Source of the DNA: Octopus sinensis
Lineage: Eukaryota
Length of the DNA stretch: 64,000 bases
Direction: 5' to 3'
NCBI RefSeq assembly: GCF_006345805.1
Contig: NC_043024.1
Location: forward strand, 16,306,001-16,370,000
Part shown: one piece after another, positions 1,231 through 63,220 of the stretch
Layout of the letters: every line of letters begins with the position of its first letter
How positions within the stretch are numbered: position 1 is the stretch's first letter
Translations under genes and position numbers: made by a program
Notes under the pieces: model-generated
Databases searched by the model: none
What the model was told of the DNA's origin: nothing
What the model saw: the letters and a program-made list of their open reading frames with translations, nothing else

Positions 1231-1683
1231 AAACAACTTATAAAAAAGGGCAAACGAAAAAATTTCTAATGCCAAATATGCCGAAATTAGACACCTTGTC
1301 CATAACCATATAATTTTTCACAATACGCACGCTACTCAAAAAAGGTCGACAGAAATTTCTAAAAAAATTCCATTATTACCATATCGGACCGATTTCAGGG
1401 TTAGTTCATAAGAACCCTCCCTTCATCAGTGATAATTGTGGCAAAGAAATAAATGAGATACTTACTCATACCCATGGAATTTTATATGATTGTTTATGAT
1501 TGGCCGTTTCATAAAAATTATATGGTTATGGACAATGTGTCTAATTTTGGCATATTTGGCATTAGAAATTTTTTCATTTGCCCTTATTTATAAGTTGTTT
1601 ATAATTTTAACCTTTAAAGGTATTTTTTTAATATGCTGGCCATTGATAAAATTTATTTTTAGAAAAAATTTTATCCTACATTA
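1231..1683. mobile_element. Non-autonomous PLE-like stub with inverted arms (1231-1317 vs about 1514-1600) enclosing a hammerhead
   Basis: Arms are reverse complements of each other. Related copies at about 8640-8775 and 44093-44283. Flanked by (TA)n. Confidence 0.7.
1370..1441 (-). ncRNA. Type I hammerhead ribozyme, canonical core, AUA cleavage triplet
   Basis: CCA-CA-ATTATCA | CTGATGA | AGGG..GTTC-TTAT-GAAC..CCCT | GAAA | TCGG-T-CCGA-T-A | TGGTAAT-AA-TGG. 7-bp stem I plus internal loop and 3-bp extension. Predicted cut between 1382 and 1381. Confidence 0.85.
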
Positions 1684-1714
1684 AATATATATATATATGT
1701 GTGTAGATATATAA

Positions 1715-1850
1715 CTTGGCGGTTCGGTAAAAGAGACCACTAGAATAAGTACTAGGCTTGCATAGAATAAGTCCTGGAGCCGAATTGTTTGACTAAAGGT
1801 GGTGCTCCAGCATGGCCGCAGTCACATGACTGAAACAAGTAAAAAAAGTA
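1715..1850 (+). mobile_element. SINE family A, 3' half
   Basis: GGTGCTCCAGCATGGCCGCAGTC..TGACTGAAACAAGTAAAA tail shared with many copies in the window. Confidence 0.8.
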
Positions 1851-2464
1851 ACTATTTATTTTTAGAATGACATTGTCGGGCTGGCGTGAGAGGCTAGATC
1901 TGGACAATTTGACCATAAAACAAGTTGAACATTTGGGGCTGGATATGGCTAGTTTAAAGCTAGAGGGTTAAGTTGACTTCTTTTCTAGAATTTGTACTAA
2001 TTCGGTCAGTTGACTGTTTCAGTTTCCATATAGTAGTTTTAGTGTCATTCCTCTGAAATATTGGTAACAAATCAATTTTATAAATCTGATTGTTTGCCTC
2101 ATGGGGTAAAGACATGTCATACTTCACAGGATTAATTGTAACAATAATTTTCAATTCTTCTTCTTCATATATTTTTCCAAAGTAATTATAACCCTGCTGT
2201 TTATACTTCTGCAATCTTGGAAGAACTATGTAAAGAATTTGTTCTTAACTCTTTTTCAATTTGACTCTAATCTATTCAGCAGGAATCAAAAATATGGACA
2301 TGTCTGTTACAGAAATGCCTGATTCAGATTTTGCCTTCCTCCATAGCCTTTGTTACATCAAAGTAATGCAGTTGTGGTGAGATTGAAAAAGCAGGGCCGG
2401 TTTAATGAAATACTTTAGTGTTCAAGCCTGCTATTGCCATGTATGTGATCTTTATCTGCAAGTT

Positions 2465-2622
2465 TCTTATTTCTTTATTGCCCACAGGGGGCTAAACATA
2501 GAGGGGACAAACAAGGACAGACAATGAGATTAAGTCGATTACATTGACACCAGTGCGTAACCATTACTTATTTAATCAACCCCGAAAGGATGAAAGGCAA
2601 AGTGGACCTCAGCGGAATTTGA
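2465..2622 (-). mobile_element. SINE family C fragment
   Basis: TTCTTTATTGCCCACA..GGACAAACAAGGACAG..CCCGAAAGGATGAAAGGCAAAGT; also at 17735-17970, 36775-36905 and 55855-55990. Confidence 0.75.
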
Positions 2623-2875
2623 ACCCTTTTTCTCTATTCTGCTTCATCTCGGTGGAATCTGGTGTCAGTGACCAGATCATAGAGTTTCTCTCAGAGCTTC
2701 ACTCAAGCCTAACCAATGAGCTACTGCAGATTTGGCTAGATGGGTTACCATACCAGATCGACAATGATTCCTGCTGGGATCAATAGGGAGAAGGTGGGGT
2801 TGTAGAGTATGAATATCAGAAATTTTATCAAGACCTGATTTTACTCTTTCTTTGGTTATCAGGGGTCCAACATAT

Positions 2876-3860
2876 TTAACCCATAAGCATTCATATTACT
2901 TTGCCAAATGTAATGCTTGTTTATTCACATTGTTTTGAATTAATAAGACATTGTCTGATAGGTGTGAGAGGCAAAATCTGGTTGGTTTGGACATAAACAG
3001 GGTGAGTATTTGGGCTGGATACGGCTGGTTTAACCCTCTAGCATTCAGATTACTCTCTCAAACATAATTCTTATTTATTCACATTGTCTTAAATTAATCA
3101 TGGATTATCCTGGAGCTTCAAGATTTCAATGATGAGATTGTTTATCTTTACAATAACATTGTAAAGTAGGTGCGAGAAGCCAAATGTAGCTGGTTTGAAC
3201 ATAAGGCATTTTGGGGCTAATATGGCTGGTTTAACCCTTTAGCATTCAGATTATCCCATCAACTGTGATGCTTATTTATTCACTTTATTTTGTATTAATC
3301 CTGCATTATCTCCTAGGAGTGGCTGTGTGGTAAGTACCTTACCAACCACATGGTTCTGGGTTCAGTCCCACTGTGTGGCACCTTGGCCAAGTGTCTTCTA
3401 CTATAGCCTCGGGCTGACCAAAGCCTTGTGAGTGAATTTGCTAGATGGAAACTGAAAGAAGCCCGTCGTATATATGTATATATATATATGTGTGAGTGTG
3501 TGTGTGTGTTTATACGTTTGTGTTTCTGTGTTTGTCCCACCAACATCGCTTGAAAACCGATGCTGGTGTGTTACATTCCCGTAACTTAGCGGGTTGGCAA
3601 AAGAGACTGATAGAATAAGTACTAGGCTTACAACAAATAAGTTCTGGGGTCAATTTGCTCAACTAAAGGCGGTACTCCAGCATGGCCACAGTCAAATGAC
3701 TGAAACAAGTAAAACATTTGCTTTGAGACTTTGATGATTTTATTTATTTTAAAAAAGACATTATATGATAGGTGTGAGAGGCTGGGTCTGGCCAGTCTCA
3801 ACATAAAACAGACAAAGTATTTAGGCTGGAAATGGCTGGTTTAACTGCTAAAGGGTTCAA
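2876..3860. mobile_element. Three tandem copies of a MITE-like element with TTAA-CCCTTTAGCA / TGCTAAAGGG-TT ends (piggyBac-like termini)
   Basis: Unit starts at about 2876, 3030 and 3231. The third unit is interrupted by a SINE at 3315-3714. A further 3' end lies at about 1850-1970. Confidence 0.6.
3315..3714 (+). mobile_element. SINE family A, full length, with internal (TA)/(TG) microsatellite
   Basis: A-box-like TGGCTGTGTGG, B-box-like GGTTCAGTCCC, body resembling the CORE domain (CACCTTGGCCAAGTG), conserved 3' half. Confidence 0.85.
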
Positions 3861-4139
3861 CTGGTCAACATGCAACTAAATTTTTTAAAATTCAAACCTC
3901 TGTAGATGATAAGTAATGCTCATTCTTTGACTGAGAGAATACCAATATGATATTCATAACCCAAATGCCTCTGTAACGGAAGAAAACATCACTATTGGAC
4001 ATGAAAGGCTGACCCTGTGCAAAACATTCAAATAACTGGGCAGGACCATCTCAGATATTGCATGACTGGACCAGGAAATCACATACAGAATGGGCAGAGC
4101 TTCAGGAGAGACTTAGAGCTTACACTGGGTACATCTTAT

Positions 4140-4635
4140 AGAGTTTCTACCTATGCCTTTTCTACAGATCAAGCAGGGCCATCTACCTGAAGGGATTTGT
4201 GGTTTGCATGCCTTCCTACTTATTAGGACTTTGGTTTTAGCTAGGTTGACTCTAAGGCCCTTCGATTCTAATCCTTGTTTCCACACTTGAAACTTCTCCT
4301 CTAGTTCTGATAGTGACTCAGCAATTAGAGCAAGGTTATCAGCATAGAGGAGGTGCCAGGGGTATCCTGTCTTGAATTGCTCCGTTATTGCCTAGAGGAC
4401 TATGATAAATAGGAGGGGGCTGAGGACTGAACCTTGGTGAACCCCTACCTCTACCCTGAATTCTTCACTCTACTTGTTGCCAAACTTCACCTTAGTGACA
4501 ACGTCCCTGTACATGGCTTGCACAGCTCTCACTAACCATTCATCTATCCCTAGCTTCCTCATTGACCACTAGATAAGGGATCGGGGGACCCTGTCAAAGG
4601 CTTTCTCCATGTCAACAAAAGCCAGGTACAGGGGT
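4140..4635 (-). mobile_element. RTE LINE reverse transcriptase fragment nested in another RTE
   Basis: LYLAFVDMEKAFDRVPRSLI..GVHQGSVLSPLLFIIVL..LLYADNLAL. Same family as 27945-29330. Confidence 0.9.
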
Positions 4636-4844: not shown

Positions 4845-5632
4845 TTTTACTCTTCTACTTGTTTCAGTCATTTGACTGTGGTCATGCTGGAGCACCACCT
4901 TTAGTCGAGCAAATCGACCCCAGGACTTATTCCTTGTAAGCCTAGTACTTATTCTACCGGTCTCTTTTGCTGAACTGCTAAATTACAGGGACGTAAACAC
5001 ACCAGCATCGGTTGTCAAGTGATGTTGGGGGGGGGGACAAACACAGACACACAAACATATACACATACATACATAGGCGCAGGAGTGGCTGTGTGGTAAG
5101 TAGCTTGCCTACCAACCACATGGTTCTGGGTTCAGTCCCACTGCGTGGCATCTTGTGAGTGGATTTGGTAGACGGAAACTGAAAGAAGCCTGTCGTATAT
5201 ATGTATATATATGTATGTATGTGCATGTATATGTTTGTGTGTCTGTGTTTGTCCCTCTAGCATTGCTTGACAACCGATGCTGGTGTGTTTACGTCCCCGT
5301 CACTTAGCGGTTCGGCAAAAGAGACCGATAGAATAAGTACTAGGCTTACAAAGAATAAGTCCCGGGGTCGATTTGCTCGACTAAAGGCGGTGCTCCAGCA
5401 TGGCCGCAGTCAAATGACTGAAACAAGTAAAAGAGTAAAAAGAGTAAAGAGAATATATATACATATATACGATGGGCTTTTTTCAGTTTCCGTTTACCAA
5501 ATCCACTCACAAGGCTTTGGTTGGCCCGAGGCTATAGAAAAAGACACTTGCCAATGGTGCCACACAGTGGGGCTGAACCTGGAACCATGTGGTTGATAAG
5601 CAAGCTACTTACCACACAGTCACTCCTACACC
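4845..5632. mobile_element. Minus-strand SINE A with a plus-strand SINE A (5076-5450) inserted in its internal microsatellite
   Basis: Minus tail at 4845-5050, plus copy at 5076-5450, minus head at 5460-5632. Confidence 0.8.
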
Positions 5633-7607: not shown

Positions 7608-8036
7608 TCTCTTTACTCTTTTACTCTTTTACTTGTTTCAGTCATTTGACTGCGGCCATGCTGGAGCACCATCTTTAGTCGAGCAAATCGACCCTGGAAC
7701 TTATTCTTTGTAAGCTCAGTACTTATTCTATCGGTCTCTTTTGCCGAACCGCTAAGTGACGGGGACGTAAACACACCAGCATCGGTTGTCAAGCAATGCT
7801 AGGGGGACAAACACAGACACACAAACATATACACACACATACATATATATATACATATATATACATATATACGACAGGCTTCTTTCAGTTTCTGTCTACC
7901 AAATCCACTCACAAGGCATTGGTCGGCCCGGGGCTATAGCAGAAGACACTTGCCCAAGATGCCACGCAGTGGGACTGAACCCAGAACCATGTGGTTGGTT
8001 AGCAAGCTACTTACCACAAAGCCACTCCTGCGCCTA
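7608..8036 (-). mobile_element. SINE family A, full length, inserted in one copy of a local tandem unit
   Basis: Flanks 7515-7607 and 8037-8100 are contiguous (TTGTATC-GATTGC) in the uninterrupted copy at 8375-8530. Confidence 0.85.
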
Positions 8037-8263
8037 TCGATTGCTATTTTCCAGTAAATATTGGTGCCTTGTTGTACCACTCACCTGTTTTTATATGTAT
8101 ACGTCTACCATTGTGGGGCTTTATTTTACTAGAAAATAATACATTTGTATTGCAATATTATTTTTCATTGAAAACTTTTTAACTGTTCTCGTTCTGTTAA
8201 CGGCTTGGAGTTAGGTGAGTATACTGGCATTGATGTGGCAACATTTGAAATCTTGTCTAGGTA

Positions 8264-8336
8264 AATGCAGCTGATGAAGACAGATCAAATTTACGTTGAC
8301 AAACGTATTTGAAAAGTCAGAAACTAGTCCTGCATT
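8264..8336 (+). ncRNA. Type I hammerhead ribozyme, canonical core, GUC triplet, long stem II
   Basis: AATGCAG | CTGATGA | A-GAC..TCAAA..TACGTT-GACA-AACGTA-TTTGA..GTC-A | GAAA | CTAG-T-C | CTGCATT. Perfect 7-bp stem I and ACTAGT palindromic stem III. Predicted cut after 8329. Confidence 0.88.
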
Positions 8337-8520
8337 ATCCGATTCTGGGTTGTCCATTTATCGAATGTTCTTCCTAGAGGTAAGACAAATTTTTCATGTT
8401 TGTTGCACACACACGTTTCTGGCAGTATATACGCAGTGAAGCTATACAATAGCGTCGTATTTGTATCGATTGCTATTTTCCAGTAAATATTGGTGCCTTG
8501 TTGTACCACTTATCTATTTT

Positions 8521-8868: not shown

Positions 8869-8908
8869 AAGAAATTTGAAAAGCTGAACGCGAAACCGGT
8901 CATTTCTT
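8869..8908 (+). ncRNA. Minimal type I hammerhead with U3-A8 core (UUGAAAA), GUC triplet
   Basis: AAGAAAT | TTGAAAA | GC-TGAAC-GC | GAAA | CCGG-T-C | ATTTCTT. Perfect 7-bp stem I and ACCGGT palindrome. Predicted cut after 8901. Confidence 0.78.
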
Positions 8909-9856: not shown

Positions 9857-10440
9857 CGTGAGATGGGATGGAGTGGCAAGAGATAGGGGTTAGGAGGTGG
9901 GATTGGAGTGTGAGATGGGATGGGATGGAGTGGTGAGAGATAGGGGTTTGGAGGTGGGATAGGGTGTGTGATGGGAGGGGATGGGGTGACAAGAGATAGG
10001 GGTTAGGAGGTGGGATTGGAGTGTGAGATGGGATGGGATGGAGTGGTGAGAGATAGGGGTTAGGAAGTGGGATTGGAGTGTGAGATGGAATGGGATGGGG
10101 TGGTGAGAGATAGGGGTTAGGTGGGATAGGGTGTGTGATGGGAGGGGATGGGGTGGCAAGAGATAGGGGTTAGGAGGTGGGATTGGGGTGTGAGATGTGA
10201 TGGGGTGGCCACAGATAGGGGTTAGGAGGTAGGATTAGAGTGTGAGATGGGATGGGAAAGGGTGGTGAGAAAAAGGGGTTAGGAGGTGGGATAGGGGTAT
10301 GAGATGGGATGGGGTGGCCAGAGATATGGGTTAGGAGGTGGAATTGGGATGTGAGATGGGATAGGTTGGGGTGGTGAGAGATAGGGGTTAGGAGTTGGGA
10401 TGGGGGTGAGGGAAGGTTGGATAGGGATGAAGGGGGTGGA
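9857..10440 (+). repeat. G-rich minisatellite, unit about 55-60 bp, about 10 copies
   Basis: Repeats of GAGATGGGATGGGATGGAGTGGTGAGAGATAGGGGTTAGGAGGTGGGATTGGAGTGT. Confidence 0.9.
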
Positions 10441-12663: not shown

Positions 12664-13263
12664 TATATGTATATATAGAAATTAAAATAAGAGAAAAACG
12701 AAACCAAGGCAGGTTTTAAATGATTCTGATAATCTTGTCCTACCTTGGTTTTGTTTTCCCCTTATTTTAATTTATACCTGCTGACTCAGAAGTCTGCTAT
12801 GGATTACCATTTATAACACTTGTGCAGTGCACCTATTGGTTAAGATCATCAGTGACCTAAACCCTTCCTTTTCACTATATCTATACATAAATACATAATC
12901 AAAATAAGCATTTGTAGTTATGCCTCAAATTCCCCGCGAAAAGCATGCTAAGACTCATTGGAAACGTATGCTGCATAAAATAAAATATTTACTGCCGCAT
13001 AATTAAATTTATAAATTTATAAATGAGGGTGAAAAATTGATATTAATTTAATAATACCATTAATTTAACACCGAGTGGCTTAGCACAAAAAACTAGGGAG
13101 AAAATACAAACTTATACATAAATTATTAGAGAGTTACCACTATGTGGATAGCTCTAGTGCTAAAAATAGCTCCGATAGTATAGCCACAGAAACAATGTTT
13201 CCAACTAGAAATAACATTACATTTAACGGAAGGAAAGTGAAATATAACGAATAAATAGAATGA

Positions 13264-13336
13264 CCCTGAACAATTGTTTCATTACTAATGTCAATGCAAT
13301 TTTACTTACATAGACATCTATAAATCATCAGCAGAG
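13264..13336 (-). ncRNA. Type I hammerhead, canonical core, GUU triplet, long stem II
   Basis: CTCTG | CTGATGA | T-TTAT-A-GATGTC-T-ATGTAA-GTAAAA-TTGCAT-T-GACATT-A-GTAA-T | GAAA | CAATTG-T-T | CAGGG. Confidence 0.78.
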
Positions 13337-13464
13337 GTTTGTCTTAAATACAATTTATTAGACCAATTCGCGGGGAATTTGAGGCATAACTACAAATGCA
13401 ATTGGTTAAATGGCACGTGTATTTGACGCTCGTGTTGGTCTAATAAATTGTATTTAAGACAAAC

Positions 13465-13537
13465 CTCAGCTGATGATTTATAGATGTCTATGTAAGTAAA
13501 ATTGCATTGACATTAGTAATGAAACAATTGTTCAGGG
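13465..13537 (+). ncRNA. Mirror copy of the 13264-13336 hammerhead with one stem I mismatch
   Basis: CTCAG | CTGATGA..GAAA | CAATTG-T-T | CAGGG. A at 13468 breaks one stem I pair. Confidence 0.65.
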
Positions 13538-13893
13538 TCATTCTATTTATTCGTTATATTTCACTTTCCTTCCGTTAAATGTAATGTTATTTCTAGTTGG
13601 AAACATCGTTTCTGTGGCTATACTATCGGAGCTATTTTTAGCACTAGAGCTATCCATATAGTGGTAACTCTCTAATAATTTATGTATAAATTTGTATTTT
13701 CTCCCTAGTTTTTTGTGCTAAGCCACTCGGTGTTAAATTAATGGTATTATTAAATTAATATCAATTGTTCACCCTGATTTATAAATTTATATATATATGT
13801 ATGTGATATATATATATATATATATATATATTTCAACAATCTTCGAGAGGGTATGTTCTTATTTTCAGTGTTTCCAAATCCAAACCAAGGAAT

Positions 13894-13950
13894 TTCCGAG
13901 CCGATGATAGAAATGTTGTTTTGACTAATCTTGAAACGTACGTTCTCGAA
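13894..13950 (+). ncRNA. Hammerhead-like motif with C4 core (CCGAUGA), in a copy (13831-14135) of the 61.8-kb repeat family
   Basis: TTCCGAG | CCGATGA | T-AGA..TCT-T | GAAA | CGTACG-T-T | CTCGAA. ACGTACGT palindrome. Confidence 0.6.
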
Positions 13951-14129
13951 TAACCTTAGCATTTGATTTTTCGATGTCATTACCCCCAAACTTTTGTGAG
14001 TTAAATTATGCAAACACTATATATGAGAGAGATTTTCTTTAAGTATTAGAAATAGCCTTAAAAAGTTTTTTAGCTGCTATTCTAATGAGTTCAGTATGCG
14101 GCAAAGTAATTTATTTTACTAAGCCCTTT

Positions 14130-14177
<48 letters not shown>

Positions 14178-17735: not shown

Positions 17736-18112
17736 TCTTATTTCTTTATTGCCCACAAGGGGCTAAACACAGAGGGACAAACAAGGACAGACAAAGGAAT
17801 TAAGTCGATTACATCGACCCCAGTGCGTAAATGGTACTTAATTTATCGACCCTGAAAGGATGAAAGGCAAAGTCGAACTCAGCAGAATTTGAACTCAGAA
17901 CGTAACGGCAGACGAAATACTGCTAGGCATTTCACCCGGTGTACTAATGTTTCTGCCAGCTTGCCGCCTTCTTTCAGTTTGGTTGGCCTGAGGCTATAGT
18001 AGAAGGCACTTGCCCAAGGTGCCACGCAGTGGAACTGAACCCAGAACCATGTGGTTTGCAAGCAACTTACTTACCACACAGCCACTCCTGCACCTATACG
18101 CTTATATATATA

Positions 18113-18733
18113 ATTAATTAATAAGGGTGAGAGAATTAGATACTAATTTAATGGCATATCTATTCAACACCAAGTGGTCCAGTGCTCCGAGAAACCTGGA
18201 TTATTATAATATTTTGTAATATATTATAATATTTTATACAAAAATAAATATAAGAGAGTGGTCACTATATGGCTCACTCTAGCACTAGTTAATCCAAAAG
18301 GTTTCAACCACAAAAATATATGTTTCCCATGAAAGTCAGTACGATTGTTAGCTCACACGAACAGGGCAAATAAAAAATAACAAAAATACAGATTATTTTG
18401 GGACAATTGTTTCGCTATTATGAATTAAATGTAATTTTACTTACAAAAAAATCCACTTGTAGCTCGTCAGCCAAAACTATCTGGATGAAATCCACTCAAT
18501 CACACGCCAGATTTTACCATAACGATAAATACACGTGTGGTTCAATGATTACATCCGACGTTATAATTCAAATGCCCCTACTAACAGCGCGCCAAACTTT
18601 CACGGAGACAAATACACATTAGAAATAAATGTAGCATAATTATAATTAATTAATAAGGGTGAGAGAATTAGATACTAATTTAATAGCATATCTATTCAAC
18701 ACCAAGTGGTCCAGTGCTCCGAGAAACCTGGAT

Positions 18734-18740
<7 letters not shown>
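18113..18740 (-). mobile_element. Hammerhead-bearing head-to-tail unit, period 532 bp (retrozyme-like or non-autonomous PLE)
   Basis: About 95 bp at 18113-18210 recurs at 18645-18740. The HHR lies between the repeats. Confidence 0.72.
18389..18483 (-). ncRNA. Type I hammerhead, canonical core, GUC triplet, long stem II
   Basis: CAGAT-AG-TTTTGG | CTGACGA | GCTA..GTGGAT..TGTAA-GTAAAA-TTACA..ATTCAT..TAGC | GAAA | CAATTG-T-C | CCAAAA-TA-ATCTG. Predicted cut between 18402 and 18401. Confidence 0.92.
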
Positions 18741-18771
<31 letters not shown>

Positions 18772-18926: not shown

Positions 18927-19050
18927 AAAATAATATGTGACAATTATTCAATAGCCAGATAACCGAAGAGATGGTGTTGTGGATTTCCACCTCGGCATCT
19001 GAAACTCAGAGTTTTATCTTGGCTACTGAATAATTGTCACATATTATTTT
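18927..19050 (+). ncRNA. Hammerhead-like motif with C4 core (CCGAAGA) closed by an inverted repeat of about 36 bp as stem I
   Basis: ..AGATAA | CCGAAGA | GATG..CATC-T | GAAA | CTC-A-GAG-T-T | TTATCT.. Arms at 18927-18962 and 19014-19050. Confidence 0.55.
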
Positions 19051-26465: not shown

Positions 26466-26503
<38 letters not shown>

Positions 26504-33545: not shown

Positions 33546-33615
<70 letters not shown>

Positions 33616-33696
33616 GCGATGGTTGTCTATCTGTGGAGGCGATGGTTGTCTATCTGGTATGATGTTTTTGTTTATTCATGACATATCTTGGATTCT

Positions 33697-33758
33697 CTTC
33701 ACTGAAGAGCAAGGGATGCGGATACTGCGTTAATTGCGAAATCACAGCTGATATGGAG
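33697..33758 (+). ncRNA. Type I hammerhead, canonical core, AUA triplet, 4-bp stem III with tetraloop
   Basis: CTTCA | CTGAAGA | GCAA-GG-GATGCGG-ATA-CTGCGTT-AA-TTGC | GAAA | TCA-CAGC-TGA-T-A | TGGAG. Predicted cut after 33753. Confidence 0.88.
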
Positions 33759-34449
33759 CTAAATTCTGTTTTTAAATGACTCGCTTCGAGAATTGCATTC
33801 GGTACAATTTGTTTATATTTGGTAGTTATGACTTTAAGAGTCCCTCCTAGCATGCGGCATTTATGTGTAATAATGCCCTCTATACAATATAAATAAATAT
33901 TTTCAAAGAAAAAAATTTACAGTTTTTTCTCTTATGAGGTTTTTCACGCTAACTACTTGATAATTTCTTGTTAAGATTTCTTATTAAGATTTTATCCTAT
34001 TTTAAAAATATGTTTTTAATTTATATATGATTTTTGATTTTGATTTTTCCAGTTTCAGCTCATGAGCTGTGGCCATGCTGGGGCACCGCCATACATATAT
34101 ACATGAACACAGACATATAAATATATACATATCCGTACATATAGATATACACATAAATACACACACACACACATACATATGTATACATACAGAATACAAT
34201 GTAAAGTGGTTGGCTTTAAGAAGGACATCTAGGTATAGAAACCATGCCAAAGTGGACAGTAGAACTTCACAATGGTTAGTGGTAAAAGGATTGAATAGCA
34301 ACAGTATAATGGCATGAGGGAAGAAGAGAAAGTCATAGGAGGGACATACAAATATATATATATATAACCAGCCCCAGCCCATTCACCAAATATAAACAAA
34401 TCGTACCGAATGCAATTCTCGAAGCGAGTCATTTAAAAACAGAATTTAG

Positions 34450-34511
34450 CTCCATATCAGCTGTGATTTCGCAATTAACACAGTATCCGCATCCCTTGCT
34501 CTTCAGTGAAG
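34450..34511 (-). ncRNA. Mirror copy of the 33697-33758 hammerhead
   Basis: Same core and stems on the minus strand, with one C/T change in distal stem II. Confidence 0.86.
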
Positions 34512-36139
34512 AGAATCCAAGATATATCATGAATAAACAAAAACATCATACCAGATAGACAACCATCGTAGGACGACCTGCTGTGCTTACTTTGGATCGT
34601 AGGGAGACCTGCTGTGCTTGAGGAGACCTCTTGAGTCAAGTACATCAACAACAAAATAAAAATCAAATGGAAGTTGTAGTTATGATACCCATGCTGGTGT
34701 CACGTAAAAAGCACCATCCAAAAGTGGCCAATACCAGCACCGCCTTGACTGGCTTCCATGAAAAAAGCACCAACCGATCGTGACTGTTGTTAGCCTCGCC
34801 TGGCCCCTGTGCCAGTGGCATGTAAAAAGCACCCACTACATTCATGGAGTGGTTGGCATTAGGAAGAGCATCCAGCTGTAGAAACACTGCCCGATCAGAC
34901 TGGAGCCTGGTGCAGCTTCCTGGCTTCCCAGACCCCAGTTAAACTATCCAACCCATGCTAGCATGGAAAACGGATGTTAAATGATGATGATGATAATGAT
35001 GATATATATATATATACACACACAAACATAAGTCATCATCATCATAATTCAAGGTCAATTTTCCATGCTAGCATGGTTTGGATGGTTCGACCGGGGTCTG
35101 GGAAACCAGGAGGCTGCACCAAGCTCTACTTCCTGCTTTCTTTGGCATGGTTTCTACATCAATCACTTAAGAGACACCATCCACTTTGCAGAGGGTATTG
35201 GGTGCATTTTAGTGACAGCAACTTGCAAGACATGACCCCCTCAGCTGAGCAGGGAACAGTATTGAGGGAGATGGTTTTGTGCCCCAGGTAATGAGAGGTT
35301 AGTGTATGAATAAAGGAACAGTAGTTAGTGTCTTACTGTAGAGGAAATCCATGGCAACCCCAGTTGATAAAGGGAAAAAAGAGGGACCTAAAAGTGTATA
35401 TAGGGGACTGGATAAGGTGAGCAGGCAGGTGAAAGTGTGAGAGGAGAATGAATGATTGAAGGGTGGGAGATTAATCAGGGATAGATTGCATACAGGTAAG
35501 TTCAGGAGTATGTGAAAGAGGAGTGGGAGGCAGAGGGGAGGGGAATGCAATGAGAGGTGAGGATGGGTGGAGGGAAGTTGTGGCCGTCTTAATTTCAAGA
35601 TTTTGCCATAAAGGCATTACACAGAGGGAGAAGCTTGTGGGTTGGACATAAACATTAATGAGATGAAAAGGATGGTATTAATGGGAGAAGATAAAAGATG
35701 CCTGCCAATCTTTTGCTTCTCTAAAACACTGTTCTTTTTCCTTTTTATCTTTTTTTAAAAACATTTCATGACTTATTACATAATAATAACAGATAAAAGA
35801 TAAACGTTGCCCTTTTCAAGCCCAGCCAGGTTCATGGGCCTAGTTTCCCCGGTTTCTGGACGAGAGGCTAGTCCATCACAGTGTTACTCAAGAAACAGGA
35901 AGAGAGCGTGAGAGAAAGTTGTGGTGAAAGAGTACAACAGGGGTCGCCACCATCCCCTGCCGGAGCCTCGTGGAGCTTTTAAGTATTTTCGCTTAATAAA
36001 CACACACAACGCCCGGTATGGGAATCGAAACCGCGATCCTTCGACTGCAAGTCTGCTGCTCTAACCACTGGGCCATTTCACCTCTACATAATAATAACAA
36101 CATACAAAACATAAATCATAAATTGTGGCGCTAAGCCTC

Positions 36140-43765: not shown

Positions 43766-43847
43766 ATATATATAATCAAAATAAGCAACAAGGATATCCA
43801 GAGGTAATGCAGTTCGATCGTTTCATGCGACTAAATTCTGTTTTTTG

Positions 43848-43934
43848 TGCAGCTGAAGATTGCTCTACATTTTAAATTGATGTAATGATTGCATTGTTCA
43901 ATTAAATGGAGTTGCATGAAACGATCATACTGCA
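43848..43934 (+). ncRNA. Type I hammerhead, canonical core, long stem II, one stem III mismatch; lies inside inverted repeat 43774-43831 / 43911-43968
   Basis: TGCAG | CTGAAGA | T-TGC..long hairpin..GCA-T | GAAA | CGATCA-T-A | CTGCA. The left arm reads CGATCG, implying an ancestral ACGATCGT palindrome and GUA triplet. Confidence 0.72.
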
Positions 43935-44092
43935 TTACCTCTGGATATCCTTGCAGCTTATTTTGATTTTAATCACCTTAGTTTGAAATTGTATGGATAA
44001 TACCATACTAAATTCTGGTGCCTCAACTTAAGTACCATATTCATCTGAATCTAAATTTTTACTAAACTTATATATATATATATATATATATA

Positions 44093-44280
44093 AACAATTT
44101 ATAAGTAAGGGCAAATGAAAAAATTTCTAATGCCAAAATATGCAGAAAATCGACACTACGTCAATAACCATGTAATTTATCACAAGCACGTGTTTCAAAG
44201 AAAAGGTGACAGAAATTTCGAAAAAATTCCATTATTACCATATCGGACCCAATTTCAGAGTTAGTTCATAAGAACCTTCT

Positions 44281-44283
<3 letters not shown>
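44093..44283 (+). mobile_element. Second copy of the 1231-1423 repeat, truncated by (TA)n just short of the CUGAUGA core
   Basis: AAACAA..GGGCAAATGAAAAAATTTCTAATGCC..ATTACCATATCGGACC..GTTCATAAGAACC. Confidence 0.8.
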
Positions 44284-44378
<95 letters not shown>

Positions 44379-44486: not shown

Positions 44487-44529
44487 TTCAGTACCGGTTT
44501 CGGTCATTTTGAGACCTTTTCAACTGTAA
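44487..44529 (-). ncRNA. Minimal type I hammerhead with U3-A8 core (UUGAAAA), GUA triplet
   Basis: TT-A-CAG | TTGAAAA | GGTC-TCAAAAT-GACC | GAAA | CCGG-T-A | CTG-A-AA. Confidence 0.7.
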
Positions 44530-50264: not shown

Positions 50265-50328
50265 GACAGGTGTCCAGTACTGATGAAGGGAGATGCCCTG
50301 AAACCAGACTGGTATACTGTGTCTTGTC
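50265..50328 (+). ncRNA. Type I hammerhead, canonical core, GUA triplet
   Basis: GACAGG-TGTC-CAGTA | CTGATGA | AGGG-AGATG-CCCT | GAAA | CCAG-A-CTGG-T-A | TACTG-TGT-CTTGTC. Predicted cut after 50314. Confidence 0.92.
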
Positions 50329-52269: not shown

Positions 52270-52338
52270 TTGTCTATCTGTCTACCTACCTACCTACCTA
52301 CCTACCTACCTACTAGTCTGTCTGTCTCTCTCTATATA

Positions 52339-52501: not shown

Positions 52502-52539
<38 letters not shown>

Positions 52540-54912: not shown

Positions 54913-55586
54913 AAAACATATATATATGCTTTCCGACAAAGAGGAATGTGAAACTCTGAGTAACAGTTTTTGTGATGTCTTTGCAGTTTTATTAGTAAAG
55001 CATATTACTCTGCCTCCGTTATTTGAGTACCATTCTTTTGATCTTGTTTCACATTTATGTGTTTACTCTGGTATATTAATTAGGCTTTCACTTCATGCAC
55101 ATCAGCTCAATTTGATTCGTTCTCAGTCAAAAGACACCTGATGTTATATTCTTATTATTTGTATTCGTAATTGTGTACCATGTTCACCATTTTTTTGTCT
55201 TTGTTGCAATACACATTCACTAGCTTTCTTGCAAAAGATCTAATGCTCTTAGCTTAGACATTTTGGGGGCAACTAGATCGAACTGTAACTGCCCAAAACA
55301 GTAAGGACATCTGGTAACTTGACTGAAGAAAGAAGGCCATGAATGACTCGTCCTTTTTTTTCCCTGTCCACCTTTGTATTGTCTATCTGTCTGATGTTTT
55401 ATTGTCCTCTATAGCATTTTTGTTCCATTTTATATATACATATATTATATATATATACATATATATATATAGATATATATATATATATATAGATATATAT
55501 ATATATATATATATACATATATATATAATATATATATATATATCATATATATATATATATACATATATAATATATATACATATATA

Positions 55587-55620
<34 letters not shown>

Positions 55621-55703
55621 TATATTATATATATATACATATATATATATATACATATATATATATAATATATATATCTATATATATATATATATTATAC
55701 ATA

Positions 55704-55735
<32 letters not shown>

Positions 55736-55768
55736 ACATATATATATATACATATATATATATATACA

Positions 55769-55824
<56 letters not shown>

Positions 55825-56019
55825 CAGAGAAAGCACATATGTATGTATAGGGAAGATAGCTGGCAGAATCGGTTGCACACCGGGTGAAATGCTAAGTAGT
55901 ATTTCATCTGCTGCTATGTTCTGAATTCAAATTCTGCCGAGGTCAACTTTGCTTTTCATCCTTTCAGGGTCAATTAAATAAGTACCAGTATACATATATA
56001 TGGATGCTCCAGCCCGGTG

Positions 56020-56460
56020 CACGTTTGCGCCTTGTCAACTAGCTTCTCGATGACAAACGCCAACCTCTTGGCTAACACCTTGGCCAAAATTTTTAAGTCT
56101 GCATTGAGCAGAGTGATGGGCCTAAAGTTACCTATAATGTCTCCCTTGTTTGGATCTTTCTTCAGCAGCGTTACAGCTCCTCGACTCACAAAACCGGGAA
56201 TGCTCCCGTTTTGCTGCCACTTGCAGTACACCGCTGCCAAGGCATCTCCAAACAAGTCTGGCATACAATTCTAAAACTCGTAGAGCAGCCCATCCAGACC
56301 CGGCGATTTGTCTCTCGAGCATCCTGCCATCGCATCCCTCACTTCCGCCGCCGTGATGACACCTTCACGGCACTCTGTGTCTCTTGCCGAGAGTCATGGC
56401 AGGCTGTGCAGGTAGGCACTGAAATCCACCCTGCGTTCACGCTCACCACTCGTCCCGTAC
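56020..56460 (-). pseudogene. L1/Tx1-clade reverse transcriptase N-terminal fragment
   Basis: KSPGLDGLLYEF..GAVTLLKK..NFRPITLLNADLKILAKVLAKRL. Confidence 0.85.
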
Positions 56461-59269: not shown

Positions 59270-60220
59270 AACCCATGGCCCCTACCTGGGACGTAGTCAG
59301 TCCACCTGTGCATACCTTCCTTCTTGTGACACTTGTGAAGACCTGTTGAGGCAAGTGAAAATCAAATCAAATCAAAACAAATCAAAATAGATGAACATCA
59401 ATGGAATTTGTATCTTTGTGGTACCAGTGCCGGTGGCACGTGGCACATAAGAAAACCATCCGAACGTGGCCGTAGCCAGTACCGCATCGACTGGCCTCTG
59501 TGCTGTGGGCACGTAACAAGCACCATCCGATCGTGGCCGTTTGCCAGCCTCATCTGGCACCTGTGTCGGTGGCACATAAAAACACCAAAACACCATCCGA
59601 GCGTGGCCGTCTGCCAGCCTCGTCTGGCACCTGTGTCGGTGGCACATAAAAACACCATCCGAGCGTGGCCGTCTGCCAGCTCGTCTGGCACCTGTGTCGG
59701 TGGCACAAAAAAAACACCATCCGAGCGTGGCCGTCTGCCAGCCTCGTCTGGCACCTGTGTCGGTGGCACATAAAAACACCATCCGAGCGTGGCCGTTGTC
59801 AGCCTCGTCTGGCACCTGTGTTGGTGGCACATAGAATCACCCACTACACTCTCGGAGTGGTTGGCGTTAGGAAGGGCATCCAGCTGTAGAGACACTGCCA
59901 GATCTGACTGGACTGGTGCAGCTTTCGGGCTCCCCAGACCCCAGTTGAACCGTCCAACCCATGCTAGCATGGAAAGCGGACGTTAAATGATGATGATGAT
60001 GATGATGATATATATATATATATGTGACCTAGTGTGTACTGTTGGCGATTTTTTTTTACTCTGTCTTCCCTTCTCTGGATCTTTCCTTCTATGTCTACGA
60101 CGAAGAGCTCCGCTCGAAACGTTAAACCCTCCTTCTTTCCTTCTTTTCTGAGCGTCCAATAATACTATATTTTTTCCATGTCCTCGCGTTGTTGTGTTTT
60201 TTGTGCTTTCTTGTTTGGAT

Positions 60221-60275
<55 letters not shown>

Positions 60276-60717
60276 GTATATATGTATATAACCATCCGAA
60301 CGTGGCTGTAGCCAGTACCGCATCGACTGGCCTCCGTGCTGTGGGCACGTAACAAACACCATCCGATCGTGGCCGTTTGCCAGCCTCATCTGGCACCTGT
60401 GTCGGTGGCACATAAAAACACCATCCGAGCGTGGCCGTCTGCCAGCCTCGTTTGGCACCTGTGTCGGTGGCACATAAAAAACACCACCCGAGCGTGGCCG
60501 TTTGCCAGCCTCGTCTGGCACCTGTGTCGGTGGCACATAAAATCACCCACTACACTCTCGGAGTGGTGGCGTTAGGAAGGGCATCCAGCTGTAGAAACAC
60601 TGCCAGATCTGACTGGACTGGTGCAGCTTTCGGGCTCCCCAGACCCCAGTTGAACCGTCCAACCATGCTAGCATGGAAAGCGGACGCTAAATGATGATGA
60701 TGATGATGATGATGATG

Positions 60718-60806
<89 letters not shown>

Positions 60807-61720
60807 TATAATATATATATGTATATATATACACATATATCATCATCATCATCATCATCATCATTTAGCGTCCGTTCTCCATGCTAGCATGGGTTGGACG
60901 GTTCAACTAGGGTCTGTGAAGCTGGAAGGCTTCATCAGGCCCAGTCAGATCTGGCAGTGTTTCTACGGCTGGATGCCCTTCCTAACGCCAACCACTCCGT
61001 GAGTGTAGTGGGTGCTTTTTACATGCCACCTGCACAGGTGCCAGACAGAGCTGGCAAACGGCCACGAAACAGATGGTGCTTTTATGTGTCACCGGCACGG
61101 GGGCTAGGCGAGGCTGGCAACGGGCACGAACGGATGGTGCTTTTACATGCCACCTGCACAGGTGCCAGACAGAGCTGGCAAACGGCTACGAACGGATGGT
61201 GCTTTTACGTGTCACCGGTACGGGGCCAGGCGAGGCTGGCAACGGACACGAACGGATGGTGCTTTTACGTGCCACCAACACAGGGTCCAGACAGAGCTGG
61301 CAAACGGCCACGAAACGGATGGTGCTTTTATGTGTCACCGGCACGGGGGCTAGGCGAGGCTGGCAATGGGCACGAACGGATGGTGCTTTTACATGGCACC
61401 GACACGGGGGCCAGACAGGGCTGGCAAATGGCCACGAACGGATGGTGCTTTTACGTGTCACCGGCACGGGGGCCAGGCGAGGCTGGCAACGGACACGAAC
61501 GGATGGTGCTTTTACATGTCACCGACATGGGGGCCAGACAGGGCTGGCAAACGGACACGAACGGATGGTGCTTGTACATGTCACCGACATGGGGGCCAGA
61601 CAGGGCCGGCAAACGGCCACGAACGGATGGTGCTTTTACGTGTCACCGGCACGGGGGCCAGACAGAGCTGGCAAACGGCCATGAACGGATGGTGCTTTTA
61701 CGTGTCACCGGCACGGGGGC
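59270..61720. repeat. Three RTE 3' UTR copies (two +, one -) with arrays of about 60 bp; the last two are tail-to-tail across (GAT)n-(TA)n-(CAT)n
   Basis: Unit GGCACGGGGGCCAGGCGAGGCTGGCAACGGCCACGAACGGATGGTGCTTTTACGTGTCACC, about 11-12 copies at 61030-61720. Explains the repetitive ORFs at 59372-61824. Confidence 0.88.
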
Positions 61721-61729
61721 CTATATATA

Positions 61730-61788
<59 letters not shown>

Positions 61789-61791
<3 letters not shown>

Positions 61792-62784
61792 CAACAATTG
61801 AGGGTAAAATTAATTAGTTATTAATCAATTTCACCAAGTATTCAGTATGTAAAAGGACCATTTAAGGCGAATTCAAAATATTACATTATATAAAAGGGCT
61901 TAGTAAAATAAATTACTTTGCCACATACTGAACTCATTAGAAATAGCAGCCCAAAAAGTTTTTTTAGCTATTTCTAATACTTAAAGAAAATTTCTCTCAG
62001 ATAGTGTTTACTCAGAATAACCCACGAAGGTATGGGGGTAAAAAACATTAAAAAATCACAAGTGCAAAGATTATTTGAGAACGTTACGTTTCTAGATCAG
62101 CCAAATAAAATTCGACATTTCTTTCGTCAGCCCAAAATTTCTTAATTTGGATTTGGAAACACTGAAAGTAGGAACATACCCTTTTGGCGACTTAACACCT
62201 CAGATGACCCGTTCAAACTGACAGTGCCAACAAATTCAAAATATGCAAGCGAAGAATTCCTGCTCTCCCCTTCCACCACGTGGGCTAAACTAGCAAACAC
62301 CATATTTTAGCGGTGAAAACCAAGGCAATAAACAGAGAGAAATGAATTATAATTTCAACAATTGAGGGTAAAATTAATTAGTTATTAATCAATTTCACCA
62401 AGTATTCAGTATGTAAAAGGACCATTTAAGGCGAATTCAAAATATTACATTATATAAAAGGGCTTAGTAAAATAAATTACTTTGCCACATACTGAACTCA
62501 TTAGAAATAGCAGCCAAAAAAGTTTTTTTAGCTATTTCTAATACTTAAAGAAAATTTCTCTCAGATAGTGTTTACTCAGAATAACCCACGTAACGTTCTC
62601 AAATAATCTTTGCACTTGTGATTTTTTAATGTTTTTTACCCCCATACCTTCGTGGGTTATTCTGAGTAAACACTATCTGAGAGAAATTTTCTTTAAGTAT
62701 TAGAAATAGCTAAAAAAACTTTTTGGGCTGCTATTTCTAATGAGTTCAGTATGTGGCAAAGTAATTTATTTTACTAAGCCCTTT

Positions 62785-62792
<8 letters not shown>
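61789..62792 (-). mobile_element. Hammerhead-bearing head-to-tail unit, period 564 bp, plus terminal inversion
   Basis: 61789-62026 recurs at 62353-62590. 62588-62792 is the reverse complement of 61885-62089. Confidence 0.85.
62074..62136 (-). ncRNA. Type I hammerhead, canonical core, GUU triplet
   Basis: TTTGGG | CTGACGA | A-AGA..GTCGAA-TTTTA-TTTGGC..TCT-A | GAAA | CGT-A-ACG-T-T | CTCAAA. Predicted cut between 62080 and 62079. Confidence 0.82.
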
Positions 62793-62824
<32 letters not shown>

Positions 62825-63093
62825 CACATATATATATATATACATATACAAGATAAGAAAATGGAGAAATACATCAAAATCAAATATCAATTACCAGATA
62901 ATACTCAATCACATACTTTATTAAACCACCACATAAGAGACTGTAGGGTTAAATATAAAAAGCAGAACAAATCAGTGTACATAAAGGAATGTACATAAAA
63001 AAGTGTACATAAAAGAGTAATGTTGTATAATAATTAGAATATATATAAAAAAGAATATAAATACAAGTAAGTATAAATATAAGTATAAATTAG

Positions 63094-63220
63094 ATCTTAC
63101 AGCTGTTTCGGCCATGTCGATAAGTATGTTTCATTTTACCAATATTGGCCCTTTATGGTTGGTCAATATATAGATATAAATGAGACATTAACAAAAATAT
63201 CACAAGGCCTCTTCGGAAAT
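63094..63220 (-). ncRNA. Hammerhead-like motif with C4 core (CCGAAGA) and a stem II insert of about 90 nt
   Basis: ATTT | CCGAAGA | GGCC..GGCC | GAAA | CAGCTG-T-A | AGAT. ACAGCTGT palindrome. Confidence 0.6.

What the first reader, a model, noticed from the sequence alone, without database searches (positions are those of the whole stretch)
1370..63220. Dense and diverse set of type I hammerhead ribozymes in otherwise anonymous AT-rich repeats
Seen in sequence: about 15 motifs at 13 loci have the full order stem I - core - stem II - GAAA - stem III - NUH - stem I'. They start at 1370, 8264, 8869, 13264/13465, 13894, 15596, 18389, 18927, 33697/34450, 43848, 44487, 50265, 62074 and 63094. Most of their flanks are unrelated, so many distinct families are involved, at roughly one locus per 5 kb. 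Established knowledge: PLE pseudo-LTRs and retrozymes carry type I HHRs, often with a palindromic stem III that allows cleavage as a dimer. Inference: this genome hosts a large radiation of self-cleaving non-autonomous retroelements. I cannot tell whether it has been catalogued for this taxon. A protein-based or RepeatMasker-style annotation would miss it.
Basis: partly seen in the sequence, partly recalled or inferred. Interest (0 to 1): 0.9.

Follow-up and report, generated by a model that had tools for sequence, protein, structure and literature searches.

The report
Penelope-type hammerhead ribozyme motifs in octopus repeats
This stretch of octopus-like repeat DNA really does carry about ten hammerhead ribozyme motifs, but they are the already described kind found in short Penelope-type retroelement copies across animal genomes, so the finding is sound but largely ordinary.

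Summary
A formal type I hammerhead descriptor finds 5 strict motifs: 1375-, 18395-, 33697+, 34450-, 50275+. It finds 10 relaxed motifs, adding 8264+, 13264-, 13896+, 44487- and 62074-. Dinucleotide shuffles give 0.01 strict hits. Decoy descriptors on the real sequence give 0.04 strict and 0.6 relaxed hits. Two more sites (13465, 43848) are decayed copies recognised by homology. 8869 and 18927 are doubtful. 15596 (a foldback) and 63094 are not hammerheads. Rfam places none above its gathering score; the best is Hammerhead_1 at 30.1 of 34 bits on 18396-18476.

The window is Octopus-type DNA. The motifs sit in short ORF-less units of about 130-480 nt. These units abut (TA)n tracts, form 5'-truncation series with fixed 3' ends, and form head-to-head inverted pairs. 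Related copies show compensatory stem changes. One family recurs at a non-syntenic O. vulgaris locus.

All the traits match published Penelope-like-element hammerheads: a short palindromic helix III, a U3-A8 core, U.U at the base of helix II, and paired motifs on opposite strands. The high density is local: I found 1 motif in 62 kb of other octopus DNA. Cleavage is untested, and several cores are probably dead. Verdict: a new member of a known kind, of modest interest.

The parts
1375..1436 (-). Hammerhead A: AUUAUCA/CUGAUGA/helix II 4 bp/GAAA/helix III AUCGGUCCGAU/A/UGGUAAU. Strict motif.
   Evidence: no Rfam hit
8264..8336 (+). Hammerhead B: 7-bp helix I, CUGAUGA, A.A at 10.1/11.1, long helix II, palindromic helix III ACUAGU, GUC site.
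   Evidence: Rfam Hammerhead_HH9 18.8 bits (gathering 52), E 0.011
8869..8908 (+). Doubtful motif F2: UUGAAAA (U3/A8) core, helix II of only 2 bp, helix III ACCGGU, 7-bp helix I.
   Evidence: seen in sequence; fails the relaxed descriptor; not homologous to F1
13264..13336 (-). Hammerhead C1: CUGAUGA, U.U at 10.1/11.1, helix III ACAAUUGU, GUU site.
13465..13537 (+). C2, the inverted copy of C1, with an A.A mismatch in helix I (decayed).
   Evidence: (I1)
13896..13950 (+). Hammerhead-like D1: core CCGAUGA (U4C, probably inactive), U.U at 10.1/11.1, helix III ACGUACGU.
18395..18477 (-). Hammerhead C3: CUGACGA, G10.1-C11.1, helix III ACAAUUGU, GUC site, helix I of 7 bp or more. Strict motif.
   Evidence: Rfam Hammerhead_1 30.1 bits (gathering 34), E 4e-6, full model
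18953..19024 (+). Doubtful relic H: CCGAAGA core and an extra U before G12, inside a foldback between (TA)n tracts.
   Evidence: fails the descriptors
33697..33758 (+). Hammerhead E1: CUGAAGA, helix II GCAA/UUGC, helix III AUCACAGCUGAU. Strict motif.
   Evidence: no Rfam hit
34450..34511 (-). Hammerhead E2, a copy of E1 in convergent orientation. Strict motif.
   Evidence: (I17, 98%)
43848..43934 (+). Family I hammerhead, decayed here: helix III ACGAUCAU, U.U at 10.1/11.1. The O. vulgaris homologue L002:9087-9162 passes the descriptor.
44487..44528 (-). Hammerhead F1 with a U3-A8 core (UUGAAAA), helix II GGUC/GACC, helix III ACCGGU.
   Evidence: A single hit of this core type; on its own it is not above chance
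50275..50319 (+). Hammerhead G, the most canonical motif: CUGAUGA, 4-bp helix II, 4-bp helix III hairpin, GUA site. Helix I can extend to 50265-50323.
   Evidence: no Rfam hit; no other copy found
62074..62136 (-). Hammerhead D2: CUGACGA, A.A at 10.1/11.1, helix III ACGUAACGU.
12998..13803 (.). Head-to-head inverted pair of family C units: 369-nt arms, 97% complementary, 68-nt spacer. The 3' ends point outwards to TA-rich tracts.
   Evidence: (I1)
13832..14135 (+). D1 unit of about 304 nt, with (TA)n on both sides and the hammerhead about 60 nt from its 5' end.
18100..18768 (-). C3 unit (18580 to 18100), preceded by a direct copy of its own 3' part (18641-18768 matches 18109-18232 at 94.5%). 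This is a partial tandem, like a pseudo-LTR.
1231..1603 (.). Element A (minus strand) plus an inverted partial copy of its 3' part (1513-1603 against 1228-1318, 95.6%).
44060..44300 (-). A2: a 5'-truncated copy of element A. It starts right after the CUGAUGA box and has the same 3' end next to (TA)n.
33612..34575 (.). Family E: two units (about 33612-33823 on the plus strand, about 34575-34368 on the minus strand). Arms are 184 nt and 98% identical, with an unrelated insert between them.
   Evidence: (I17)
43775..44068 (.). Family I composite: an inverted 5'-truncated copy, a spacer, the hammerhead unit and a tail, with (TA)n on both sides.
61790..62800 (.). Family D2 composite with direct (99%) and inverted (99-100%) partial copies. 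The inverted copy at 62588 starts inside helix III.
   Evidence: (I3)

Best explanation
The window is Octopus-type repeat-rich DNA. Scattered through it are short, ORF-less retroelement units of about 130-480 nt, each encoding a type I hammerhead ribozyme of the kind described for Penelope-like elements (PLEs).

Shown:
- The motifs exist far above chance.
- They fall into about 7-8 families, some of them related to each other.
- Related copies keep the catalytic boxes while the stems change in a compensatory way.
- The units show 5'-truncation series with a fixed 3' end, head-to-head inverted copies and partial tandems.
- They usually abut (TA)n tracts.
- One family is also present at a non-syntenic O. 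vulgaris locus.

Inferred from published PLE and hammerhead biology:
- The units are pseudo-LTR-derived or non-autonomous derivatives, mobilised in trans by the RT/GIY-YIG proteins of autonomous Penelope elements. Those elements are active in octopus.
- When a unit is transcribed, the hammerhead cuts 3' of position 17. Motifs with a real helix III hairpin (A, E, G) would cut as monomers. Motifs with a 6-9-nt self-complementary helix III (B, C, D, F, I) would cut as dimers.
- This trims read-through or multimeric RNA into unit templates.

Some copies are probably dead relics: the U4C core of D1, and the decayed stems of 13465 and 43848. I cannot tell whether these are dedicated non-autonomous families or solo, 5'-truncated pseudo-LTR pieces of full Penelope elements. 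I put dedicated families at about 45%.
For: - Motif enrichment: 5 strict hits against 0.01 in shuffles and 0.044 in decoys; 10 relaxed hits against 0.56-0.64 in decoys.
- Features that were not imposed: A15.1-U16.1 and H17 in 10 of 10 hits.
- Rfam: Hammerhead_1 at 30.1 bits, E 4e-6, on C3; HH9 at 18.8 bits on B.
- Compensatory changes in pairs defined by BLAST, not by the descriptor. C1 against C3 (about 62% identical overall) has 3 double changes in helix I and 1 in helix II. D1 against D2 has 1. The window and L002 copies of family I have 1, and the L002 helix III is self-complementary only if G.U wobble is allowed.
- Retrotransposition signatures: the A/A2/A3 truncation series; inverted head-to-head pairs that are 97-100% identical; a partial tandem at C3; a (TA)n-bounded D1 unit and family I composites; non-collinear flanks between the window and L002.
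- No ORF or RT/GIY-YIG next to any motif.
- Host: the nearest named relatives of a LINE fragment are O. vulgaris and O. bimaculoides proteins, and repeats are shared at 80-95% identity.
- Literature: PLE hammerheads have a short palindromic helix III, a long helix II and a U3-A8 covariant. They occur as dual motifs 100-700 bp apart on opposite strands and mostly as solo copies (PMC4209133). PLEs form inverted 5'-truncated copies and target microsatellites (PMC8557442). Thirty Penelope families are recently active in O. vulgaris (PMC13282606). Animal retrozymes are related to PLE pseudo-LTRs (bioRxiv 10.64898/2026.07.22.740005).
Against: - No PLE coding sequence is in the window, and I could not compare the units with annotated octopus Penelope pseudo-LTRs, so the PLE link rests on resemblance.
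- No motif reaches an Rfam gathering score, and five regions gave no hammerhead hit at all.
- Proximity to (TA)n is not significant on its own: median 169 nt against 413 nt at random, P about 0.1.
- The published PLE consensus has one extra nucleotide 5' of a G10.1-C11.1 pair. Five motifs here instead have a symmetric A.A or U.U at that position.
- The 5' ends of truncated copies lie inside the ribozyme, not at the predicted cleavage site, so nothing here shows that cleavage shaped the copies.
- Family E is convergent rather than head-to-head.
- Monomer MFE folds do not give the three-way junction, and dimer energies are only comparable to two monomers.
Confidence: 0.75

Rival explanations
1. 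The units are SINE-like elements mobilised by LINEs that happen to carry a hammerhead, like the Sm-alpha and Sj-alpha elements of schistosomes. They would not be PLE derivatives.
For: The units are short and non-coding, and they are 5'-truncated with a fixed 3' end, as target-primed reverse transcription of any kind would produce. LINE RT remnants are abundant in the window. Octopus genomes hold 893 families of unclassified SINEs (PMC13282606).
Against: ARAGORN finds no tRNA-like head. Head-to-head inverted duplicates in which both copies keep their own 3' end, and partial tandems, are PLE hallmarks rather than SINE ones. The palindromic helix III and the U3-A8 core are described for PLE hammerheads. 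No 3' tail is shared with the LINE fragments in the window.
Confidence: 0.1
2. They are non-LTR retrozymes in the strict sense: head-to-tail tandem repeats whose RNA is cut at two hammerheads and circularised.
For: Unit sizes (130-480 nt), low GC content and type I hammerheads fit the description in PMC7229834. U.U at the base of helix II is reported for an axolotl retrozyme hammerhead.
Against: The window has no head-to-tail array with a hammerhead in each unit. Paired motifs are on opposite strands. The only same-strand neighbours belong to different families or are decayed (8264/8869, 13465/13896).
Confidence: 0.08
3. The motifs are chance matches or purely dead relics with no ribozyme activity in any copy.
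For: Rfam gathering scores are not reached. Several cores deviate (U4C, U3/A8). About 0.6 relaxed hits per window are expected by chance. PLE min-hammerheads cleave poorly in vitro.
Against: Chance is excluded for the set as a whole by the shuffle and decoy controls, by the un-imposed A15.1-U16.1 and H17 features, and by compensatory changes. Inverted arms that are 97-100% identical indicate recent insertions.
Confidence: 0.07

Closest known systems
Minimal and small hammerhead ribozymes of Penelope-like elements (Cervera & de la Pena 2014, PMC4209133; Lunse, Weinberg & Breaker 2016, cited in PMC6765202)
   Same: Type I topology. Short self-complementary helix III, which implies action as a dimer. 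Long helix II and short helix I. A U3-A8 core covariant. Paired motifs 100-700 bp apart on opposite strands. Mostly solo copies. Many divergent families within one genome.
   Different: No RT/GIY-YIG ORF or demonstrable pseudo-LTR is present here. Five motifs have a symmetric A.A or U.U at 10.1/11.1 instead of one bulged base 5' of a G-C pair. Three motifs (A, E, G) have a proper 4-bp helix III hairpin, which is more canonical than the minimal type.
Metazoan non-LTR retrozymes (Cervera & de la Pena 2020, PMC7229834; Li et al. 2026 bioRxiv 10.64898/2026.07.22.740005)
   Same: Short, AT-rich, non-coding units with type I hammerheads. A proposed dependence on PLEs. A U.U mismatch at the base of helix II occurs in one axolotl family.
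   Different: Retrozymes are defined by head-to-tail tandem arrays that yield circular RNAs. The copies here are dispersed, inverted or solo.
Rfam Hammerhead_1 (RF00163) and Hammerhead_HH9 (RF02275)
   Same: C3 aligns over the whole RF00163 model (30.1 bits). B aligns to HH9, including the UGCAG/CUGCA helix I.
   Different: Both scores are below the gathering scores (34 and 52). The other motifs give no hit.
Sm-alpha / Sj-alpha hammerhead-bearing SINE-like elements of schistosomes
   Same: A short dispersed non-coding retroelement carrying a type I hammerhead.
   Different: No Pol III or tRNA-like head was detected. The inverted and partial-tandem architecture points to PLEs.

Membership tests
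Hammerhead ribozyme, type I | Conserved core boxes C3-U4-G5-A6-N7-G8-A9 and G12-A13-A14 | tested here: met
   Exact in 8 of the 10 descriptor hits. D1 has U4C and F1 has the U3-A8 covariant.
Hammerhead ribozyme, type I | Three helices around the core, with helix I open (5' and 3' ends in helix I) | tested here: met
   The descriptor hits are far above decoys. Helices I and II are recovered in most MFE folds. Helix III is not recovered in monomer folds.
Hammerhead ribozyme, type I | A15.1-U16.1 pair and a non-G at cleavage position 17 | tested here: met
   10 of 10 window hits and the L002 hit, without being required by the descriptor.
Hammerhead ribozyme, type I | Score at or above the Rfam gathering threshold (RF00163, RF02275, RF02277 and related models) | tested here: not met
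   0 hits at the gathering score. Best scores: 30.1 of 34 bits for C3 and 18.8 of 52 bits for B. None for A, G, E1, C1, C2 or D1.
Hammerhead ribozyme, type I | Site-specific self-cleavage | not testable with these tools
   Needs in vitro transcription or mapping of RNA ends.
PLE-associated small/minimal hammerhead | Very short, palindromic helix III (dimer-competent) | tested here: met
   ACUAGU, ACAAUUGU, ACGUACGU, ACCGGU and ACGGUUGU (with G.U wobble) in B, C, D1, F and I. D2's ACGUAACGU is self-complementary apart from one central A. A, E and G instead have 4-bp hairpins, which are themselves near-palindromic.
PLE-associated small/minimal hammerhead | An extra nucleotide between A9 and 10.1, followed by a conserved G10.1-C11.1 pair | tested here: inconclusive
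   G-C in C3, E and F1. A-U in A and G. A symmetric A.A or U.U in B, C1, D1, D2 and I.
PLE-associated small/minimal hammerhead | Location in the pseudo-LTR of an element encoding RT plus a GIY-YIG endonuclease | tested here: not met
   No GIY-YIG signature in any frame. Only sub-threshold LINE-type RVT_1 fragments, all far from the motifs. Homology to octopus Penelope termini could not be tested.
PLE-associated small/minimal hammerhead | PLE insertion architecture: inverted 5'-truncated copies, partial tandems, microsatellite targets | tested here: met
   C1/C2, A/A', I and D2 show inverted copies. C3 shows a partial tandem. D1 and I are bounded by (TA)n. Proximity to (TA)n alone gives P of about 0.1.
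Non-LTR retrozyme | Head-to-tail tandem repeats of 150-450 bp, each with a hammerhead | tested here: not met
   No such array is present.
Non-LTR retrozyme | Expression as small circular RNAs | not testable with these tools
   Needs RNA data.
Sm-alpha-type hammerhead SINE | A Pol III (tRNA-like) promoter head | tested here: not met
   ARAGORN finds no tRNA-like sequence in the window. This is a weak test.

The most novel reading that the evidence does not exclude
Octopus genomes may hold a lineage-specific radiation of very short (about 130-480 nt) hammerhead-bearing, Penelope-dependent SINE-like elements. These would accumulate in (TA)n-rich hot spots and would account for part of the roughly 900 'unclassified SINE' families of O. 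vulgaris. Their ribozymes would routinely carry a symmetric A.A or U.U pair at the base of helix II and remain active.
Probability: 0.25. Interest if true: 0.5.

Novelty: new member of a known kind. Interest (0 to 1): 0.3.

Why it matters
The result adds cephalopods (octopus) to the animals in which Penelope-type hammerhead motifs can be shown at the level of individual families. It also shows that standard Rfam and protein-based annotation misses nearly all of them. If the families prove abundant, they could explain part of the large pool of unclassified short repeats in octopus genomes. They would also give natural test cases for dimer-dependent hammerheads with unusual bases at the foot of helix II. 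It does not change the current picture of ribozyme-bearing retroelements.

Tried and rejected
- A whole-window Rfam scan at gathering and at E<=10 returned only microsatellite-driven miRNA look-alikes. Slices were needed to see the two sub-threshold hammerhead hits.
- I did not build a covariance model from the strict hits. MAFFT could not keep the long helix II variants in register, and a model built from three sequences would add little.
- A Pfam scan of the ten longest ORFs, and then of ten TE-like ORFs, found no PLE protein.
- Looking up a window ORF by exact product found no encoding contig.
- A protein search with the O. vulgaris RT returned a pan-metazoan LINE clade rather than more octopus loci.
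- Pattern scans for families I and C found nothing in metagenome contigs (two scans) or viral contigs (one scan).
- The two U3-A8 candidates are not homologous.
- (TA)n proximity as a stand-alone statistic was not significant.
- Thermodynamic comparison of monomer and dimer folds was inconclusive.
- Lunse et al. 2016 (PMC5785218) is not held in the library.

Full report

The window is AT-rich (about 38% GC), full of microsatellites and without tRNA genes. Rfam at gathering thresholds finds nothing. At E<=10 the whole-window table is filled with microsatellite-driven miRNA look-alikes.

I therefore wrote an explicit type I hammerhead descriptor. The strict form requires helix I of at least 4 bp, CUGANGA, helix II of at least 3 bp closing directly on the core, GAAA, and a helix III that is a hairpin of at least 3 bp or a palindrome. 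It gives five hits: 1375-1436(-), 18395-18477(-), 33697-33758(+), 34450-34511(-) and 50275-50319(+). Three hundred global and three hundred 500-bp-local dinucleotide shuffles each give a mean of 0.01 hits.

Shuffling destroys natural hairpins. So I also kept the real sequence and permuted the conserved letters. The 539 decoy descriptors give a mean of 0.044 hits, maximum 2.

The relaxed form allows one core deviation or the U3/A8 pair, a non-canonical 10.1/11.1, and one helix I mismatch. It gives ten hits, adding 8264+, 13264-, 13896+, 44487- and 62074-. Decoys give 0.56-0.64, so at most about one of the ten should be a chance match. All ten have A15.1-U16.1 and a non-G at position 17, although the final descriptor asked only for some base pair there. 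A-U is expected in 25% of chance pairs.

**2.

| Verdict | Sites |
|---|---|
| Strong | 1370, 18389, 33697, 34450, 50265 |
| Variant but supported | 8264, 13264, 13894, 44487, 62074 |
| Decayed copies recognised by homology | 13465, 43848 |
| Doubtful | 8869, 18927 |
| Not hammerheads | 15596, 63094 |

- 13465 is the inverted twin of 13264 with an A.A in helix I.
- 43848 has helix III ACGAUCAU.
- 8869 has a helix II of only 2 bp.
- 18927 has a CCGAAGA core and an extra U before G12.
- 15596 is a foldback with 41-nt arms.
- 63094 has no core box.

**3. Rfam membership**

On short slices, Hammerhead_1 (RF00163) aligns end to end with 18396-18476(-) at 30.1 bits against a gathering score of 34, E 4e-6. 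Hammerhead_HH9 aligns with 8257-8349(+) at 18.8 bits against 52. This also shows that the tool can detect hammerheads. Slices around 50275, 1375, 33697 and 13250-13965 give no hammerhead family. By Rfam's curated criterion, none is a member.

**4. What carries the motifs?**

A LINE fragment in the window is closest to proteins named from Octopus vulgaris and O. bimaculoides. A 20.9-kb O. vulgaris locus shares the window's SINE and LINE repeats at 80-95% identity. The host is therefore an octopod.

No motif lies next to a recognisable ORF. The window holds only sub-threshold LINE-type RVT_1 fragments and transposase remnants elsewhere, and no GIY-YIG signature.

- **Family C.** C1/C2 is a head-to-head inverted pair at 12998-13803 with 369-nt arms that are 97% complementary. 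C3 lies at 18580-18100 on the minus strand. C3 and C1/C2 are one family at about 62% identity over about 350 nt.
- **Family D.** D1 (13832-14135) and D2 (62182-61878, minus strand) are about 80% identical.
- **Element A.** It has a copy at 44300-44060 that begins exactly after the CUGAUGA box, and a stub at 8800-8690. All three end at the same 3' sequence next to (TA)n. This is a 5'-truncation series in hammerhead-sense orientation, as target-primed reverse transcription produces.
- **Other architecture.** C3 is preceded by a direct copy of its own 3' part. D2 has 99-100% identical direct and inverted partial copies, and one of them starts inside helix III. D1 is a 304-nt unit with (TA)n on both sides.
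- **Family I.** It is a composite bounded by (TA)n on both sides: an inverted truncated copy, a spacer, the hammerhead unit and a tail. The same composite occurs in O. vulgaris locus L002, whose flanks are not collinear with the window. The composite has therefore moved.
- **Family E.** It consists of two convergent units that are 98% identical.

**5. Covariation**

These pairs were defined by BLAST, not by the descriptor.
- C1 against C3 keeps CUGAYGA and GAAACAAUUGU unchanged. Helix I shows three double (compensatory) changes and one single change. Helix II shows one double change.
- D1 against D2 shows one double and one single change in helix I.
- The two family I copies differ by a U-A to A-U swap in helix II.
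- The O. vulgaris family I helix III, ACGGUUGU, is self-complementary only with G.U wobble. That is a strand-specific, RNA-level signature.

The numbers are small but all point the same way.

**6. Density**

Three O. vulgaris regions from other chromosomes, totalling 61.6 kb, give one hit, the family I homologue. Decoys there give 0.87. The window gives ten. The conditional binomial P is 0.012, or 0.04 if inverted duplicates are collapsed. The high density is therefore a property of this window, or possibly of its species. My data do not support extrapolating one locus per 5 kb to the genome.

Proximity to (TA)n is suggestive (median 169 nt against 413 nt at random) but not significant on its own, with P about 0.1. 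(TA)n tracts are also dense in L002.

**7. Comparison with what is known**

Cervera and de la Pena (PMC4209133) described minimal hammerheads in the pseudo-LTRs of Penelope-like elements. They report thousands of mostly solo copies per metazoan genome. The traits they list are:
- a short helix I and a long helix II;
- a tiny palindromic helix III that implies action as a dimer;
- a U3-A8 core covariant;
- pairs of motifs 100-700 bp apart on opposite strands;
- great sequence diversity within one genome;
- low activity in vitro.

Every one of these sequence traits is seen here.

Craig et al. (PMC8557442) describe the PLE insertion architecture: inverted 5'-truncated copies, partial tandems and microsatellite targets. 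A U.U at the base of helix II is reported for an axolotl retrozyme hammerhead (PMC7229834). Animal retrozymes were recently argued to derive from PLE pseudo-LTRs. Penelope families are numerous and recently active in O. vulgaris, and 893 families there are 'unclassified SINEs' (PMC13282606). Neither that paper nor PMC8967140 mentions ribozymes. The giant squid genome paper lists 235 Rfam Hammerhead_1 hits (PMC6962438). I found no paper cataloguing hammerheads in octopus.

**8. Most likely mechanism**

Shown here: the motif anatomy, the families, the compensatory changes and the retrotransposition-type copy structure.

Inferred:
- The units are PLE pseudo-LTR derivatives or non-autonomous partners, copied by Penelope RT/endonuclease in trans.
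- Their transcripts are trimmed by the hammerhead 3' of position 17. A, E and G would act as monomers. B, C, D, F and I would act through an intermolecular helix III.

Nothing in the window shows that cleavage happens. Truncated copies start inside the ribozyme rather than at the cut site, and fold energies are inconclusive. D1 (U4C), 13465 and 43848 are probably inactive.

The rivals are less well supported, for the reasons given in their entries: LINE-mobilised SINEs, tandem retrozymes, and chance matches or wholly dead relics.

**9. Verdict**

It is unproven on self-cleavage and on a genome-wide radiation. The class is already described. This is a new member of a known kind, of modest interest.

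Noticed in passing
window 15596-15698: A near-perfect foldback (arms 15596-15636 and 15658-15698). It looks like a small palindromic or MITE-like element.
   Followed up: partly
window 60628-60928 and 34908-35121: Long foldbacks of a SINE-like unit around (GAT)n(TA)n. They give sub-threshold Rfam MIR7533 and MIR810 matches (82-88 bits against gathering scores of 170-230).
   Followed up: no
window 61011-61721; 59440-59841; 60344-60542: Arrays with a 62/124-nt period. Those at 59-60.5 kb are on the opposite strand. They create long spurious ORFs.
   Followed up: no
window 9858-10408; 22600-23300; 26400-26750: A G-rich 57-nt tandem array with GC skew +0.56, and two arrays with a 9-nt period in inverted orientation with strong opposite GC skew.
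   Followed up: no
window 4116-4391(-), 27109-29342, 53259-56270, 51276-51566: Decayed LINE RT/PHD fragments (RVT_1 below the cut-off) and a mariner-like transposase remnant. None is next to a hammerhead motif.
   Followed up: partly
window 33761, 34434(-), 43833; L002 about 9068: The block AAATTCTGTNTTTT occurs only at families E and I (3 matches against 0.36 expected). It lies just after the cleavage site in E and just before helix I in I. This hints that the two families are related or permuted.
   Followed up: partly
window 13290-13310 and 18425-18445 (family C helix II apex): The apical hairpin UGUAAGUAAAAUURCAUU of helix II is conserved between copies that are only about 62% identical overall. 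It may be a tertiary-contact or protein-binding element.
   Followed up: no
window 8264-8336 and 43848-43934: Motifs B and I share the helix I sequence UGCAG/CUGCA with the Rfam HH9 consensus (the amniote intronic hammerhead).
   Followed up: no
window 757-936, 3315-3668, 5152-5627, 7664-8037, 20764-21092, 21817-22159, 52338-52708 and others: A SINE of about 370 nt is present in more than 12 copies in the window, and also in all three O. vulgaris loci at 80-95% identity.
   Followed up: partly
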